DNA of 62,921 nucleotides, filler included, from Reticulomyxa filosa (Eukaryota > Protista > Foraminifera): assembly GCA_000512085.1 (NCBI GenBank). It is 21 parts of 21 records of this genome, joined end to end, with 100 filler letters (N's around TTAATTAATTAA, not from the genome) between each part and the next. Parts side by side here need not be neighbours in the genome. Positions count along the whole stretch, not along the records: positions 1 to 8,916 come from ASPP01016907.1; 20 more parts are not named here. One strand, given 5' to 3'. Positions 1 through 8,885 of the stretch are shown here, one piece after another. Below the pieces are notes generated by a model. That model was not told the DNA's origin. It made no database searches and saw only the letters and a list, made by a program, of their open reading frames with translations. Within the stretch, counting starts at the first letter, position 1. Each line of letters opens with the position of its first letter. The position numbers and the translations under genes are program-made.

Positions 1-531
1 TCTCACCAGTGCGCGAGCATCGGCTCCAATGCCAGCATACACGCAACCCAAGTGTTCTCTGTCCCTATTTTTTTTTTTATAACACATTAACGCCACTACT
101 CAACTTTCTTATTGAACTAATAAAAGGGCACACAAAAGGGGTTTCCCCTTTTTCTCTACAAAAAAAAAAAAAAAAATTTTTAAATTAAAAAAATTTTCTT
201 AACGAAATTTGGAACACTTTATCCCATTCATCAACGTCCACTAACGATGAATAAGGCTTTCTTTCTGTGGCTATCACCACACCATCTTTGGCAACAATGC
301 CCAATGAAGTGTCTCCATTGCTTACTGCCTATTTTTTTTGTCGTATGACCCCACCCCCCTTGTCTTCACTTTTCATGTTCGTTTTTATCGTTTCAACCTT
401 TTTGTGTCACAATTTGTTTTTTTGATTGGGTGAAGCGTAGAGACACTCTGGTAAACTTTAAAACTATTGTCTATTTGAGTTAATTTCCCACTGGAATCAA
501 AAGTTGTCAAGCCGAAATTGTTGTCTGACAT
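1..531 (-). CDS. PSMA2: 20S proteasome subunit alpha-2, 5' part (3 exons, runs off the window start)
   Basis: Not in the ORF track; spliced by hand. Exons 531-457, 328-204 and about 58-1 with GT-AG introns give MSDNNFGLTTFDSSGKLTQIDNSFK/AVSNGDTSLGIVAKDGVVIATERKPYSSLVDVDEWDKVFQIS/EHLGCVYAGIGADARALVR. This matches the alpha-2 signatures [12 protein letters not shown] and HIGLVYSGMGPD. Confidence 0.9.
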
Positions 532-1180: not shown

Positions 1181-2332
1181 ATGCAAGTTTCTGCCGACAA
1201 AACTGTGGTAAATTTTCTTCAAACTTCTTATCTTGTGATTAGACACAAATGATTTTTATTGTGTGACTGACTAGTCAGAAAAAGTAGTAAAACTTATCAT
1301 TCAAAATTGGATTCGTATTTTGAATGTACAATTAGGGTGGATTAACGATTTTGACAAAACTGTTTTCAAATATGTAATGCTTTTTGCTTTTTTTTTTTTT
1401 ATTTTAAAATAAATAAATGAACGCATTTTACTTGTAATAAATCTTTAAAACATAGGCGAAATATTTTCAATTTTCAAAAATTTTGAACGGACAAACAGTA
1501 ATAAATGTGTAAAATTTTCACCAGATAGCAATAAAATTGCATCATCCTCATGGGATAAAATAATTCGAATATGGGATGTAAAATCAGGAAAACAAATCCA
1601 AAGTCTTATTGGGCATTCGGATTATGTTTTTAACGCAAAATTTTCATCAGATGGAAATAGTATATTGTCATGTTCAAATGACAATACAATTCGATTGTGG
1701 GACGTGAAGTCAGGACAAGAGTTGTTGCAATTAAAAGGACCACTTGCTCTAATATTGTGTATAGACTTTTCTTCAGATGGTAAAACTATTGTGTCAGGTT
1801 CAGCGGATAAAAAATAAGACTTTGGGATGTGCAATCTGGAAAAGAGATTCAACAATTAGAAGGTCATTCCAGCGATGTAATTAGCGTGCAATTTTCTCCT
1901 GATGATCAAATGATTGTGTCATCATCACTTGATACAACAATTGGTTTATGGGATGTGAAATCATGTAAACGATTGAAAGAAATAAAAGGACATTCCAATC
2001 GGATTAATCATGCGAAATTTTCTCCAGATGGTCAATTTGTTGTTTCATGTTCATGGGATAGTACTATTCGAATATGGGATGTATTATCAGGAAAACAATT
2101 ACAAAAATTGGATGTATATCCAGATGTGCTGTATGACGTACAATATTTTCCTGATGGTCAAACTATTGTGTCATGTGCAAGAGGTAATATTATTTGCTTA
2201 TGGGATGTAAGATCAGGAAACGAAATACAAAGATTAGAATATTTCTGTACATTGATGTGTATTGATGTTTCGCCAGCGAGTAATACAATCATATCAGGAT
2301 CTTCGGACTATACAATACAAATTTGGGAATGA
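1181..2332 (+). CDS. WD40-repeat protein (7-bladed), 3 exons, one homopolymer frameshift
   Basis: Exons 1181-1207, 1275-1373 and 1456-2332 with GT-AG introns. Repeats of GH..V...FSPDG...S.S.D.TIRIWD. The A6 run at 1809-1814 should be A7 (DKKIRLWDVQSG), which joins the upstream repeats to ORF 1829..2332. Confidence 0.85.
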
Positions 2333-3006: not shown

Positions 3007-6000
3007 ATGGATACACTCTCTCCCTTTGAAACATTATCTCCATTGCCTGTCCCACTTACTCGTTCTCAATGTGTATTTTACAAGCAAGAAATTCTTGTTT
3101 TGGGGGGATGGAAACAAATAAATTGTTATTCTTATCATGTACTCAAAAATCAGTACAAATTTATTTGTTCTTATCCAAAGAATTTTACATTGACTGGCCA
3201 CAGCGTGATAAAACTCACAAAAAGTGACAATAATTCAAATTATATCACTTTATTGTCTTTCGGCGGACAAGGAGAAAATGAAAAAAAACATACATTAATA
3301 ATGAAATATATTAGTGTTTGGGATGATAACATTAAAATTAAAAAGATTGAAGATTTCAATAAATGGATGCCTTTTGTTAATAATGACAACCGTCGAGTTT
3401 TCATTGGAAGAGAAAAAGATAATTATCATGGCATACGTGCAATAATTACCGGACAACATAGTCATCTATTATTTATCACATATCCTCCAAAGAACATTGA
3501 CGTGTTTAATTTAAATACATTTCGATATGTCAATCACAGTATTTTACCAACTGACGATTACATATGGTATCATTGCTTTGAGCTTAAAAAGGGAGATAAT
3601 TTAACAGCAAAGTATGAATCGGTGTTATTTTGTAAAGCGACAGGATTATTGATCGAATACGATGAAAACGAAAACAAATTCAAATTTCAAAAATTACCTG
3701 TTTTTGCTGATTTGTTACCTTTTTATCGATATGCATATATACAAATCTGCGATTCTATTTTGTTTTTTGGTGGATGGAATGACTACATTGGCTTTAAGTC
3801 AATTGTTTCAAAAGCAGTATGTCAATATTCAATGGATGAAAATAAATGGATAAAATTCGATCACACATTGCCTATTTCATTGAATGATTGCATTGGAGTA
3901 TTGAATGACGATAAGACACATATCCATATTTTGGGAGGAGAAGATGGAAATTGTGATGTGACATCAACACATGTAAAGACCAAAGTGTTAGAATGGATCG
4001 ACACAATTGAAAAAGAAGTACTGGAAAGTGATAAAAACAATAAAAAGAGGATATATGAGTCCAAATCTCCGTTGATTTTATTAACTGGATCAATGAAATA
4101 TAGACGGAGACCATATTTGAAATGTGTCAAACAAGACCTAATTTTGTTACAAAATCTGTTTCAAACTAAATTTGGCTATCAAGTTTTTACTACTTATAAT
4201 CCACGATATCCAATCACGCAATTGCTTTCTTTGAGAAAATTAGACACATTCATTTCAAAGCGTTATTTAAATTTGACTGATACTTCCAATGATAACAAAA
4301 ATATCTACGATGGACTGATATTTGTATGGTGTGGATATGGAAAGAGTCAAGATGACACTTTGATGATCACAAGCGACAACAAACGCAAATGTCTCAAAGA
4401 GATTCAAGACGTGTTTGTAAGACAAACTAACTATTTTGTGAACAAACCAAAAATATTTATAACAATTACATACAGCGATGAAAAAAAAGGAAATGAAGAT
4501 ATGGCAACTGAATTTCGGTATGAAAATAATAAAGATATATTTCACTATTTTTGCAAGCATTCCATTGAAATCAATGATTGGAGACTTGGGATATGAGAGA
4601 AGGAAGCAAAGTAATTTCACAGAGATTTTTTGTCAAATGATTGAAAAAAATATGAACAAAAGTTTGAATGTTATTGTCAAACATGTGGCAGACACAATCT
4701 TTGATGGAAAATTTAAAAAGGATATTTCGGTCACTTATTCTGACATTCATTTGATTCCACAGTTATGTGGTAATGATAATACAAAAGGAACAGTGGTGCT
4801 AATAAAACCACTGGGATTTAAAAGATATTGGAGTAACGAATGGATACGAGCAAATGTGGAAGCGGCAAAAAGAATGGAGAAAATGATTAAAGCAAATGGA
4901 CAAGGATTGATCATTGTGGTCAAAAATACATCTGAATGGGAAAATACAATATTTCCGAATTTAATCAAACTCAATGATTACACTTTCTCATTATCGAAAT
5001 TTTTCAATAATAGAGTGAGCAAAATTTTATATGAAGAATATGGTATATATGTAATAGAAAGAAAATCAGTAATACTTGATGATATAAATATTGATGGAAA
5101 TGTATATGTTGTGAATTGTGAGATAAAATGCCAACAAAATATCAAAATCACATCGCAGCTATTTGTTACAAAGAATGCAATTCTTGATCGACAATTGAGA
5201 CAGTCTATTTTGCCCATTCAATGGGATACCAAAATGAATCATGATATTCCAGTACAATTGCAAGATCTTGAAGACAAAGGAAAAAAGTTGATGAACGACA
5301 ATCTGTTAGATGACTCCATTCTTCTTTTCGAACAACACTTACAACTTTCACTTAATACATTTGGTGCCGATCATCCTTTTGTAGCTGGATCGTATTATAT
5401 GATTGGAGATGTTTACTATGGAAAAAAAAATTATAAACAAGCAATTTTATACTATGAAAAAACTTTACAAATTATGTTTGATAATGTTACAACCAACGAC
5501 TACGTTGCCATTTTATGCCACAGTTTAGGACTGTCTTATTCGAGAATAAAACAGTATGATAAATCGATTGAATATTATGAAAAAGGCTTGAACATTACAT
5601 TGAAATTATTTGGAGATAATTTTCCAGATATCATTGATTGGCACTCCAAACTGGCAAATGCATATAGTAATGCAAAGCGTTTTGGCAAGGCTATTGAATA
5701 TTACGTAAAGATTGTGAAAATTCGATTACATAAATATGGAGCCAGTCAGAGCGATATAGCTGATGCATACGACGATCTAGGCCGCGCTTACCATAGGAAA
5801 AAAATGTACAATAAAGCAATTTTCTATTATGAAAAGGCATTACAAATGTATTTAGATATATTTGGAGTCAAAAATGCCACAGTTGTTAATTTGTATGAAA
5901 ATTTTGCACGAGCTTATACTAGTAAGCGGCAGTATGATAAAGCAATTGAGTGCTTTGAAAAAGCGATAGAAATCATGTTAAGTATATTTGGAGGCAAACA

Positions 6001-7057
6001 TGAAGATATTACCGACACATACATCGATTTAGGAAATGCCTATGAAAAAAAAGGAGCCAATGATAAGGCAATTTTTTATTATAAAAAAGCATTACAAATG
6101 AGATTAGATATATATGGTAACAATAATCTCGATGTCGCTATAGCATATGACAATTTAGCTAATTGCTATATGTGTGATCGACAATATGACAATGCCATCA
6201 AACAATATGAAATATCGATGAAAATAAAATTTGACATTGTTGAAATAAGTCATTCTTCTATTGCTGATTCTTATTGTGGCTTAGGTTGTGTTTACAGTAA
6301 CAAAGGCGATTACACGAAATCAAAGCAATATTTTGAAAAAGAATTAGACATTAGAAAAAATGCATCAGAGGGCGATCATAATAGTGTTGCCAATGTATAT
6401 ATCAACTTAGGGATTACTTGTCGAAACGCAAGAGAATTTGACAACGCAATTCAATATTATGAAGAAGCATTGAAAATTAGAGTGACAAATTTTGGAGCCA
6501 ATCATAGTAGTGTTGCTGAATGCTATACTCAATTTGGGTGTCTTTATGATGACAAAAAACAATTTGACAAAGCATTTACGTCTTTTGAAAAAGCATTGAA
6601 CATTCGACTAGAGATATTTGGACCCAATGATGAAGCTGTTGCCGATTCATATTACGATTTGGGAGATACATGCAATAAGAAAGAACTCTATGATAAAGCA
6701 ATCAACTATCATGAAAAAGCTTTACATATTAGATTGCATATCTTTGGAATAAATCACAATGATGTCGTCAATTCATACCATTCTTTAGGAGTTGCTTATT
6801 ATAATAAAGGAGATCACAATAAATCTATTGAATATTATGAAAAAGCGATACAAATAAAAAAAACAATATCCAAAAAGGTAAATATTACAATTGGTTACTG
6901 GTGTTGGGATTTGGGAAGTACACTGAACACTGTCGGGGAAAGAAAAAAAGCGAGTGAATATTATAAAGAATCATGGAAAGTGTTCAATGTAATTCTAGGA
7001 GAATGGAATACAACAACATTAAGATCGAAAGAGAAAGTAAAAGAACTGACTGAGTGA
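3007..7057 (+). CDS. Kelch-like propeller + inactive caspase-like (peptidase C14 fold) domain + unknown domain + about 14 TPR; one gene split by a 1-nt frameshift near 4541
   Basis: ORFs 3007..4596 and 4478..7057 join as KDIF|TIFASIP and are colinear with the unbroken paralog at 44512-46380 (EDMFTMSVNTS). Kelch-like GG motifs (LVLGGW, LSFGGQ, LFFGGW, HILGG). Caspase-like motifs DGLIFVWCGYG, KPKIFI and SNFTEIFCQMI. 42-aa TPR units of the kinesin-light-chain type. Confidence 0.85.
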
Positions 7058-7518: not shown

Positions 7519-8885
7519 ATGTTAATATTACAAACAAAAGAATGCGATGCAATAAAAGTAAAAAGCTTACAAATTTTATCACTTGAAGGCTGTTATAACA
7601 AAGACTGGGTAGCAGCCTCGAATAAACAAAATCGTTTAAAAAGTCTACAGTGTTCAATATGTAAACAAATTGCAAATAATGCAATGGAATTAACTTGCAA
7701 TGAGCATGAAGATCACAACGACGCACTGGTAGTTGGTGAACAATGTTTAATGAAATATTTACAAGAGAATAACAACCAATGTCCTACTAAGGAACACAAT
7801 ACTTGTAGCTACATGAAAGGACGAACGATACGACGTTTTGTTAATGAATTAAAGGTGATCTGTCCTCGACAATTTGTAAGCTATTCCAATCAAAGAGTAG
7901 GTATCCAAAAAAGGGAAGGTGGCACAATTACAGAAATTAAACGTACTTGCACATTTAAAGGAAAGATTGAAGAAATAAAAGAACATTTAGAAAATGCATG
8001 TCCTTTGAAAATTTTGGGATGTAAATATAAGGATTATGGATGTGATGATATTTTATATGATTATAATTTTGAAGAACACTTAGAATCACAAATGAAGAAA
8101 CATTTACATTTGTTGTCGGATCATATTGCCATTTCTCAAAAACAGAGCCAACTCAATGAAGTGAATTGTATTGTTGTACTTGCATTCAAACTGCTTTTCG
8201 TTTATTTGTTTATTTATTGATTGTATTCAAAAAAAAAAAAATATATATATATTGGTTGTAATTTTGTACAAAATGAATATTTTAGGAAGAAAAAAAACAA
8301 TTAAGATTAAAAATTAAAGAACAGGGAGATGAAATTCAATCATTGAAGTTAAGTAATGATGATAAACATTCACAAATTGAAGAGCTTTTGAAACAGAAAC
8401 AACAATGGAATGAAATGAAAAATTTATACAATAATCTTCTACAAGAAGTACTTAAATATCAAGTTATTTTATTCTATTTGTTTGTTTTATCGTAATAATA
8501 TTATATATATATATATATATATGTATATAACAAATCAAATCAGTTGGAAATTGATGAGTTAAATTGCAAATTAAGTAAAAGTAATACCGAAAATGGCCAA
8601 TTGAAGGAACAAATACAAAATAAAAATTATGAAATTATATTTAAACAAAACATTAAATCGGAAGATAAGCAAATTATTAATACAAATAAGTTAGTTCAGC
8701 AATTGAAAAAAGACGACAGCATTACCAAAAAAGATATCAATGACAAAGAAAAACTATCGCTATTTCCTTATGAACAATACATTCAATTTTCTAAAAAGGA
8801 TTTGATATTACCACAAGATTATCAAAAAATTATCCAAAAAATCAAGTGATCAAGACGAATCAAGCATTCAAGATAATGCTTCATC

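What the first reader, a model, noticed from the sequence alone, without database searches (positions are those of the whole stretch)
3007..7057. Kelch-pseudocaspase-TPR protein: candidate modular receptor/adaptor family
Seen: after repairing a single extra T near 4541, the two ORFs form one protein of about 1350 aa. The middle region (about 4063-4700) follows the caspase/C14 pattern along its whole length: beta1 PLILLTG, D...L..LF...FGYQV, DGLIFVWCG-Y-G, KPKIFITIT-Y-S, then p10-like DIFTIFAS and SNFTEIFCQMI. Established: caspases need His in (S/G)HG and Cys in KPK.F.IQACRG. Here both positions are Tyr. Inference: a non-proteolytic caspase-fold dimerisation or scaffold module (cFLIP-like) placed between two ligand-binding repeat arrays, resembling innate-immune or cell-death receptors. 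I do not recognise this architecture from any described system.
Basis: partly seen in the sequence, partly recalled or inferred. Interest (0 to 1): 0.85.

Follow-up and report, generated by a model that had tools for sequence, protein, structure and literature searches.

The report
Dead-caspase, Kelch and TPR protein gene
This gene of the foraminifer Reticulomyxa filosa encodes a large protein with a Kelch-like propeller, a caspase-fold domain that has lost both catalytic residues, an orphan domain and a long TPR array; it belongs to a family of more than 50 mostly "dead" caspase-TPR proteins that no paper I could search describes.

Summary
The window is R. filosa contig ASPP01016907.1, and 3007-7057 is gene RFI_20013.

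**Frame break.** The two ORFs differ in frame only by one extra base at about 4539, judged against the uninterrupted paralog RFI_00774. GenBank bridges the break with a 40-nt "intron" (4518-4557). That model deletes a conserved core strand of the caspase fold, so it is very probably an annotation artefact.

**Caspase fold.**
- A family profile hits caspase-3, Dronc and CED-3 (E 4e-12 to 1e-9).
- An AlphaFold model of the paralog's domain superposes on caspase-8, -9, -7 and CED-3 (Z 19-20, rmsd about 2.5 Å) across p20 and p10.
- Tyr replaces both the catalytic His (4336-4338) and Cys (4471-4473).

**Family.**
- The domain lies in a well-supported R. filosa clade of 55 sequences, of which 51 lack the dyad.
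- None of 36 Casp-Mid-TPR proteins has His/Cys. All 9 Kelch-caspase paralogs do.
- The full four-part architecture occurs only in this gene and RFI_00774.
- dN/dS is about 0.35, so the dead domain is under constraint.

**Open points.** A cFLIP-like scaffold or regulator role is plausible but untested. Whether the frame break is an assembly error or a young pseudogene could not be resolved, because no reads were available.

I rate it a new variant of a known kind (pseudo-caspase).

The parts
3007..7057 (+). Gene RFI_20013 (Reticulomyxa filosa). It is one coding unit of 1349 codons plus stop if the single-base frame break is read through. GenBank models it as 1336 aa.
3007..4041 (+). N-terminal Kelch-like beta-propeller module (aa 1-345). 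It is a shuffled module shared at 45-53% identity with about 30 R. filosa proteins, where it is fused to WD40 arrays, active caspases or TPR arrays.
   Evidence: Weak Kelch_6, ATRN-LZTR1 and NANM hits in the window. Paralog modules match Kelch families. The profile hits Kelch proteins in the PDB at E 3e-5. The fold was not modelled.
4048..4762 (+). Pseudo-caspase domain (p20-like plus p10-like), interrupted by the frame break at 4539.
   Evidence: Pfam Peptidase_C14 E 0.0096, sub-threshold. Family profile against the PDB: caspase-3 E 4e-12, plus Dronc and CED-3. AF2 model of the 78%-identical paralog, pLDDT 86. Foldseek E 6e-7. VIA-align Z 19-20, rmsd 2.3-2.6 Å over 177-190 residues, model residues 1-237.
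4336..4338 (+). Tyr codon (TAT) at the position of the catalytic His (motif WCGYG).
4471..4473 (+). Tyr codon (TAC) at the position of the catalytic Cys (KPKIFITITYS against KPKLFIIQACRG).
4539..4539 (+). Single-base insertion relative to the intact paralog. It is the only indel in the 4-kb CDS alignment that is not a multiple of 3, and it is the cause of the two-ORF appearance.
4518..4557 (+). The 40-nt GT..AG 'intron' of the GenBank model. It is probably an annotation device to bridge the frame break. It removes the 13 residues that include the conserved p10 strand DIFTIFAS.
   Evidence: P0001 against the ORFs. The stretch is coding and conserved in the paralog and the family.
4784..5305 (+). 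'Mid' domain. This conserved alpha/beta plus beta-rich module always precedes the TPR array in the family, including in members without a caspase domain. No known fold was found.
   Evidence: A3 alignment. AF2 pLDDT 81. Foldseek PDB best E 0.28. VIA wide best Z 4.7. ESM Atlas TM below 0.5. No feature hit.
5303..7054 (+). Kinesin-light-chain-type TPR array, about 13-14 units of 42 aa.
   Evidence: TPR_12 E 3e-104 with 10 stretches. Autocorrelation peaks at lags 42 and 84.

Best explanation
**What it is (shown).** Positions 3007-7057 are one R. filosa gene for a cytosolic protein of about 1350 aa with four modules: a Kelch-like propeller, a caspase-fold domain, an orphan 'Mid' domain and about 13 KLC-type TPRs.
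- The caspase-fold domain is a true homolog of animal-type caspases, but Tyr replaces both the catalytic His and Cys, so it cannot work as a cysteine protease.
- It belongs to a Reticulomyxa-specific expansion of caspase-Mid-TPR proteins in which the dyad has been lost repeatedly. Separate Kelch-caspase paralogs keep it.
- The apparent two-ORF structure comes from one extra base at 4539. The 40-nt intron in GenBank is an artefact.

**How it probably works (inferred).** The dead caspase domain is kept under purifying selection as a binding or dimerisation surface.
- The TPR array and the Kelch propeller would bind partners or ligands.
- The pseudo-caspase would pair with itself or with His/Cys paralogs, modulating them the way FLIP(L) modulates caspase-8.

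**My odds.**
- Fold, dead dyad and family placement: about 0.95.
- Frame break rather than intron: about 0.95.
- Frame break is an assembly error rather than a real recent mutation: about 0.6.
- Scaffold or regulator acting through caspase-type pairing: about 0.35.
- The overall confidence of 0.6 weighs the well-supported identity against the untested mechanism.
For: **Identity.** P0001 is RFI_20013, on contig ASPP01016907.1.

**Fold and homology.**
- The family profile hits caspase-3 at E 4e-12, plus Dronc and CED-3, across p20 and p10.
- 32 of 66 family members pass Pfam Peptidase_C14 individually.
- The AF2 model has pLDDT 86. Foldseek gives CED-3, caspases, MALT1 and cFLIP at E 6e-7 to 1e-5. 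VIA-align gives Z 19-20.

**Dead dyad.**

**Family census.**
- 0 of 36 Casp-Mid-TPR proteins have His/Cys, against 9 of 9 Kelch-Casp proteins.
- The 55-row clade has SH-aLRT support 97, with 51 rows lacking the dyad. At least 6 state changes are forced by supported branches.
- All named members are R. filosa.

**Constraint.** dN/dS against the paralog is 0.35 for the pseudo-caspase, 0.30 for Kelch, 0.32 for Mid and 0.49 for TPR.

**Frame break.**
- It is the one 1-nt indel among 7 indels.
- The segment deleted by the GenBank model aligns to a caspase p10 strand.
- The downstream 832 codons have no stop, although 6% of single substitutions would create one. Any real frameshift is therefore younger than about 0.02 substitutions per site, against dS 0.3 between the paralogs.
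- A second single-base frame break sits in an A-run of the upstream WD40 gene on the same contig. This hints at indel errors in the assembly.

**Precedent.** FLIP(L) has Arg and Tyr at the dyad and pairs with caspase-8 (PMC7586951). Bacterial pseudo-orthocaspases have Tyr and Ser (PMC6426788).
Against: - No expression or read data could be obtained, so the locus may be a fresh pseudogene.
- The fold was modelled on the 78%-identical paralog, not on the window's own broken sequence.
- Nothing supports dimerisation. The homodimer prediction gave no verdict, and pairing with an active paralog was not tested.
- Pairwise dN/dS averages over both lineages, so it cannot prove that this copy is still constrained.
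- There is no NTPase, death-fold, signal peptide or other signalling domain to tie it to a cell-death or immune pathway.
- The Mid domain is of unknown fold and function.
Confidence: 0.6

Rival explanations
1. This copy is a young pseudogene. The 1-nt insertion at 4539 is real, the protein is truncated after the p20-like half (529 aa), and only the paralog RFI_00774 is functional.
For: The frame break is in the only available assembly. The family is large, with many partial or truncated members, so gene turnover is likely. The sequence context (ATATATTT) is not a clean homopolymer.
Against: It is the only frame-breaking change in 4 kb at 14% divergence, and the other six indels are multiples of 3. 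There is no stop in the 832 downstream codons, which limits neutral decay to under about 0.02 substitutions per site. dN/dS downstream is 0.43, so it is not relaxed. A second 1-nt break lies in an A-run of the neighbouring gene, which suggests assembly indel errors.
Confidence: 0.35
2. The GenBank model is right: 4518-4557 is a real 40-nt intron, and the protein (1336 aa) lacks 13 residues.
For: The stretch has GT..AG ends, and its length of 40 (3n+1) restores the frame.
Against: The 'intron' is coding and about 90% identical in the paralog, where it is part of an uninterrupted ORF. It encodes the strand DIFTIFAS, which is conserved across the family and aligns to the caspase p10 strand DFLYAYS. 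In the model that strand is part of the central sheet.
Confidence: 0.03
3. The domain is still an enzyme and uses non-canonical residues, for example the near-invariant Cys of the WCG(H/Y)G motif.
For: W-C-G is almost invariant in the clade even where the dyad is gone, and the domain is under purifying selection.
Against: The same C-G-H-G context occurs in the active Kelch-caspases, so the Cys looks structural. The residues flanking the nucleophile (caspase-3 QACRG) are also replaced, by I-T-Y-S-D. The dyad sites vary widely among close paralogs (Y, N, G at the His site; Y, W, N, S, I, T, F, E at the Cys site), which is the pattern of a relaxed active site.
Confidence: 0.05
4. The pseudo-caspase is a bait or decoy rather than a dimerisation partner. 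It would mimic an active caspase so that an inhibitor, a pathogen factor or an endogenous regulator that targets caspases is captured, and the TPR or Kelch modules would report the event.
For: The family shows a large, fast-diversifying lineage-specific expansion with variable repeat arrays and shuffled N-terminal modules. dN/dS is highest in the TPR part (0.49).
Against: There is no direct evidence, no known output domain and no expression data.
Confidence: 0.1

Closest known systems
Animal caspases (MEROPS C14A: caspase-3, -7, -8, -9, CED-3, Dronc)
   Same: The fold is the same over p20 plus p10 (Z 19-20). Profile homology reaches E 4e-12. The KPK-hydrophobic strand before the nucleophile and the p10 motifs are conserved.
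   Different: Tyr replaces both the His and the Cys, and the QACRG context is lost. There is no CARD or DED prodomain. The domain is embedded between a Kelch-like propeller and Mid plus TPR.
FLIP(L), the vertebrate pseudo-caspase (PDB 3H11, 3H13)
   Same: It has a caspase fold without the dyad and with Tyr at the Cys position (PMC7586951). It appears among the structural matches. Active paralogs coexist that share the same N-terminal module type: DED in animals, the Kelch-like module here.
   Different: It has Arg, not Tyr, at the His site, and it has tandem DEDs. It is a single gene rather than a family of more than 50 members. Its heterodimerisation is demonstrated, whereas here it is only inferred.
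Bacterial pseudo-orthocaspases (Tyr/Ser variants; PMC6426788)
   Same: They are C14 homologs in which Tyr replaces the catalytic His, and they are conserved as presumed non-proteolytic proteins.
   Different: They are prokaryotic and related to metacaspases, with a p20-only architecture and different partner domains. The Reticulomyxa domain is closest to animal-type caspases and keeps a p10.
Reticulomyxa filosa caspase-like proteins (Klim et al. 2018, PMC5982838; GenBank 'caspase-3' and 'caspase-8', e.g. P0106, P0121)
   Same: They come from the same organism. They have the same N-terminal Kelch-like module (45-51% identity) and a homologous caspase domain (HMM E about 1e-38).
   Different: They keep GHG and D-x-CRG, have the caspase at the C-terminus after a spacer, and lack Mid and TPR. 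They form a separate branch of the tree.
Repeat-coupled caspase-like proteases of bacteria and fungi (C14 or CHAT fused to TPR, WD40 or NACHT, such as gasdermin-associated proteases). This comparison is recalled from my own knowledge and was not tested here.
   Same: A caspase-fold module is fused to a long TPR sensor-like array.
   Different: Those proteases are active, and many have a STAND NTPase. Here there is no NTPase and no catalytic dyad.

Membership tests
Caspase / peptidase C14 fold (clan CD) | Caspase-hemoglobinase alpha/beta fold with p20 and p10 parts | tested here: met
   AF2 model of the paralog's domain (78% identical), pLDDT 86. VIA-align Z 19-20, rmsd 2.3-2.6 Å, 177-190 residues aligned to caspase-8, -9, -7 and CED-3. 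Foldseek probability 1.0.
Caspase / peptidase C14 fold (clan CD) | Significant sequence similarity to C14 family models | tested here: met
   The window alone is sub-threshold (PF00656 E 0.0096, 16.1 bits against a cut-off of 21.4). The family profile hits caspase-3 at E 4e-12, and 32 of 66 relatives pass PF00656.
Active caspase (C14A protease) | Catalytic His (SHG) and Cys (QACxG) dyad | tested here: not met
   Tyr at both sites. The same holds in the paralog RFI_00774.
FLIP(L)-like regulatory pseudo-caspase | Caspase fold lacking the dyad, retained under selection | tested here: met
   (dN/dS 0.35).
FLIP(L)-like regulatory pseudo-caspase | Heterodimerisation with an active paralog through the protease-like domain | not testable with these tools
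   Only a homodimer prediction was run, and it returned no verdict. Active paralogs exist.
FLIP(L)-like regulatory pseudo-caspase | Tandem death-effector domains | tested here: not met
   There is no DED or any death-fold hit. The N-terminus is Kelch-like.
Kelch beta-propeller | Repeated Kelch motifs forming a propeller | tested here: inconclusive
   The window's hits are below cut-off (Kelch_6 E 3e-4). Homologous modules of paralogs match Kelch families in 17 of 30 cases (best E about 1e-11). The profile hits PDB Kelch proteins at E 3e-5. The fold was not modelled.
TPR (TPR_12 / kinesin-light-chain type) | Tandem 34-aa helix-turn-helix motifs in 42-aa units | tested here: met
   TPR_12 E 3e-104 with 10 stretches. 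42-aa periodicity.
STAND / NLR-type receptor | Central P-loop NTPase (NACHT or NB-ARC) | tested here: not met
   No Pfam NTPase hit. No Walker A motif. The Mid domain matches no known fold.

The most novel reading that the evidence does not exclude
Foraminifera evolved, independently of animals, a caspase-regulatory network. In it, dozens of catalytically dead caspase-TPR proteins (some, like this one, carrying the same Kelch-like module as the active Kelch-caspases) would pair with and tune a small set of active caspases. That would be a FLIP/caspase-8 logic multiplied into a sensor repertoire, working without death-fold adaptors or NTPases, with the orphan Mid domain as a new oligomerisation or coupling module.
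Probability: 0.15. Interest if true: 0.8.

Novelty: new variant of a known kind. Interest (0 to 1): 0.5.

Why it matters
- **Rarity of pseudo-caspases.** They are rare and well studied only in vertebrates, where FLIP(L) is described as the only human one (PMC7586951). A protist lineage with more than 50 dead caspase domains under purifying selection, fused to ligand-binding repeat arrays and living beside active paralogs with shared modules, would be a natural experiment. It could show how protease folds are recycled into scaffolds.
- **Caspase phylogenies.** Reticulomyxa caspase-like sequences are used as outgroups for metazoan caspase trees (PMC10959488, PMC11251625). Users of these sequences should know that most of the family is non-catalytic and multi-domain.
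- **Annotation.** The case also exposes an error: a fake 40-nt intron that removes a core strand.
- **Limits.** All evidence is computational. The organism is hard to work with. This particular copy may be broken.

Tried and rejected
- **Own-genome search:** no genome is held for this window.
- **Sequencing runs across the frame break:** none was listed, so read laying was not used and the choice between error and real mutation stays open.
- **Exact-protein look-ups:** the 859-aa ORF is not on record, and P0001 is found only on this one contig of one assembly.
- **Complex prediction, homodimer of the paralog's pseudo-caspase domain:** score 0.00, 'no answer'. This is neither support nor evidence against.
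- **Mid domain:** Foldseek against the PDB (best E 0.28), VIA-align wide (best Z 4.7), ESM Atlas by shape (TM at most 0.41 by query) and by features (no usable hit). No fold or family was assigned.
- **N-terminal regions and spacers of other paralogs:** no Pfam family.
- **Literature:** the R. filosa genome paper is not held. Searches for Reticulomyxa with TPR or Kelch found no description of this family.
- **Intron reading:** rejected (see rivals).
- **NLR-like reading:** rejected for lack of an NTPase.
- **The repaired 1349-aa reading:** I did not hand it to any search or folding tool. The intact paralog P0002 served as proxy, and only an alignment column was dropped inside the dN/dS script.
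Full report
**Origin and gene model**

The window has about 30% G+C. A protein search identifies it as Reticulomyxa filosa (Foraminifera), contig ASPP01016907.1 of GCA_000512085.1. The finding is gene RFI_20013, a 'hypothetical protein' of 1336 aa (P0001).

The GenBank model equals ORF 3007-4517 joined to 4558-7057. It therefore bridges the frame change with a 40-nt GT..AG 'intron' at 4518-4557.

**The frame break**

The closest paralog is RFI_00774 (P0002, 77-82% protein identity). It is encoded by one uninterrupted ORF on another contig (L001 2474-6715).

- A global alignment of the two coding sequences (86% identity) has seven indels.
- Six are multiples of three. One is a single base present only in the window, at 4539.
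- With that column dropped, the window reads ...YENNKDIFTIFASIPLKSM..., colinear with the paralog's ...YKNSKDIFTIFANIPLKSM....
The product is 1349 aa.

The annotated intron would delete 13 residues, including DIFTIFAS. That strand is conserved in the family, aligns to the caspase p10 strand DFLYAYS, and is a strand of the central sheet in the model. I regard the intron as an annotation artefact (about 0.95).

Whether the extra base is an assembly error or a real, very recent mutation cannot be settled. No sequencing run was listed, and only one assembly carries the contig.

- Against an old pseudogene: the 832 codons downstream have no stop, although 6% of single substitutions would make one. 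That limits neutral decay to under about 0.02 substitutions per site, against dS of about 0.3 between the paralogs.
- dN/dS is 0.32 upstream and 0.43 downstream of the break.
- A second one-base break lies in an A-run of the upstream WD40 gene on the same contig (about 1809-1815). This hints at indel errors in the assembly.
- My split is about 0.6 for an error and 0.35 for a young pseudogene.

**Caspase fold**

- The window's own sequence only grazes Pfam Peptidase_C14 (E 0.0096, below the cut-off).
- An exhaustive HMMER search with residues 342-511 found 95 representatives at E up to 1e-3 and 59 at E up to 1e-10.
- A 66-sequence alignment (A1), used as a profile, hits caspase-3 (E 4e-12), Dronc, CED-3 and caspase-7 over both subunits.
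- 32 of the 66 members pass PF00656 on their own.
- An AlphaFold2 model of the intact paralog's region (P0002:425-840) has mean pLDDT 86.
- Foldseek returns only caspases, MALT1 and c-FLIP(L) at the top (E 6e-7 to 1e-5).
- VIA-align gives Z 19-20 and rmsd 2.3-2.6 Å over 177-190 residues, spanning model residues 1-237.
- This maps to window 4048-4762.

**Dead active site**

- In the profile alignment the family's G-h-G lies under caspase-3 S-H-G, and 'a-y-r-g' lies under A-C-R-G.
- The window has WCGYG (Tyr codon TAT, 4336-4338) and KPKIFITITYS (Tyr codon TAC, 4471-4473).
- The Gln and Arg flanking the nucleophile in caspase-3 QACRG are Ile and Ser here.
- Both Tyr codons are one GC-to-AT transition away from His (CAY) and Cys (TGY). 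In a genome of about 30% G+C this may explain why Tyr recurs at both sites. This last point is my inference.

**The family**

All named relatives at E below about 1e-13 are R. filosa proteins. More distant hits are unnamed metagenomic proteins and one Bacteroidota MAG protein, mostly with an intact dyad.

| Architecture among the 132 proteins fetched | Count |
|---|---|
| Casp-Mid-TPR | 36 |
| Kelch-Casp | 9 |
| Kelch-Mid-TPR | 2 |
| Kelch only (mostly with WD40 arrays) | 19 |
| Kelch-Casp-Mid-TPR (this gene and RFI_00774) | 2 |

- None of the 36 Casp-Mid-TPR proteins has His plus Cys. All 9 Kelch-Casp proteins do (GHG and D-x-CRG).
- On a maximum-likelihood tree the TPR-linked sequences form a 55-row clade (SH-aLRT 97) with 51 non-dyad and 4 dyad members (P0015, P0032, P0039, P0042).
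- Supported branches force at least 6 changes of state, so the dyad was lost several times.
- In 54 rows taken by architecture or hand-picked as TPR-linked, roughly that clade, the His site is Y 31, H 19, N 3, G 1. The Cys site is Y 29, C 7, W 4, with the rest scattered.
- The window's domain nests inside this clade next to RFI_00774. The Kelch module was therefore grafted onto a Casp-Mid-TPR gene, not inherited from the Kelch-caspases. This is an inference.

**Other modules**

- *N-terminus.* The first 345 residues are a module shared at 45-53% identity with about 30 R. filosa proteins. 17 of 30 such modules match Kelch-type Pfam families. I did not model it.
- *Mid domain (4784-5305).* It is conserved (A3) and folds confidently (pLDDT 81). 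It has no match in the PDB or the ESM Atlas. It always sits directly before the TPR array, including in proteins without a caspase domain (P0003, P0011, P0127).
- *C-terminus.* It is a 584-aa TPR_12 array with a 42-aa period.
- There is no P-loop, death-fold or other signalling domain.

**Mechanism**

Shown:
- It has a caspase fold that cannot perform cysteine catalysis.
- It is kept under purifying selection (dN/dS 0.35).
- It is flanked by two protein-binding repeat modules.
- It belongs to a family that coexists with active paralogs, some of which share its N-terminal module.

Inferred:
- It acts as a non-proteolytic scaffold or regulator, most simply by caspase-type pairing with itself or with active paralogs.
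- The analogy is FLIP(L), which has Arg and Tyr at the dyad and forms a favoured heterodimer with caspase-8 (PMC7586951).
- A homodimer prediction gave no verdict, so this stays at about 0.35.
- Alternatives are a decoy or bait role (about 0.1), residual non-canonical catalysis (about 0.05), or no function in this copy because it is a pseudogene (about 0.35; this overlaps the others, because it concerns only this copy).

**Comparison with the literature**

- Klim et al. 2018 (PMC5982838) reported that Reticulomyxa has caspase-like proteins that group with animal caspases. One of them (ETO10778.1) serves as an outgroup in metazoan caspase trees (PMC10959488; see also PMC11251625).
- Pseudo-variants of C14 proteases are known from vertebrates (FLIP(L)) and from bacteria (Tyr/Ser pseudo-orthocaspases, PMC6426788).
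- I found no paper describing the dead caspase-Mid-TPR family, the Mid domain or the Kelch fusion. The genome paper itself was not available.
- I therefore rate this a new variant of a known kind.

**Verdict**

- The functional part is plausible but untested.
- The claim that the architecture is new holds only for the exact four-module combination and for the pseudo-enzyme family as a whole.
- Interest: 0.5.

Noticed in passing
window 1500-2332 (+), break near 1809-1815: This is the 3' part of a WD40-repeat gene (WD40 E 4e-38). Its frame changes between ORFs 1665-1817 and 1829-2332, at an A-run (GATAAAAAATAAGAC). One more A would read ...SADKKIRLWDV.... It is a second single-base frame break on the contig, and it sits in a homopolymer. 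The paralog locus L001 also has a WD40 gene upstream.
   Followed up: partly
window 7519-8220 (+) and onward to about 8850: The downstream gene has a RING-like Cys/His pattern (my reading of the ORF translation, not tested) and a TRAF-type zinc finger (zf-TRAF E 4.6e-5, just under the cut-off). GenBank models it as 394 aa. It is not shared with the paralog's locus (no tblastx match).
   Followed up: partly
window 388-531 (-): A short ORF (MSDNNFGLTTFDSSGKLTQI...) has a weak proteasome alpha-subunit N-terminal signature (PF10584 E 0.0086, below the cut-off). It may be the first exon of a proteasome subunit gene that runs off the contig's start.
   Followed up: partly
P0106, P0108, P0113, P0116, P0119, P0121, P0124, P0126 (R. 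filosa Kelch-caspases): The active paralogs have Asp where caspases have Gln, two residues before the catalytic Cys (IID-x-CRG). As I recall it, paracaspases and metacaspases have an acidic S1 pocket there. These 'caspase-3' and 'caspase-8' annotated proteins might therefore cleave after basic residues rather than after Asp.
   Followed up: no
P0003 (RFI_16440), P0011, P0009, P0010, P0127, P0012: The orphan Mid domain also occurs without any caspase domain, twice in P0003, and directly after the Kelch module in P0127 and P0012. It therefore behaves as the N-terminal cap or coupling module of the TPR array.
   Followed up: partly
L001 2267-2656 (RFI_00774 model): The GenBank model of the paralog carries a 76-residue N-terminal extension, with an intron, upstream of the conserved MDTLSPFETL start. 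DNA similarity between the two loci begins only about 54 nt before that ATG, so the extension is probably spurious.
   Followed up: no
P0005, P0006, P0013, P0014 residues 1-100: Most Casp-Mid-TPR paralogs start with a conserved domain of about 100 aa (MSS.RIFVTV...) in place of the Kelch module. It has no Pfam match.
   Followed up: partly
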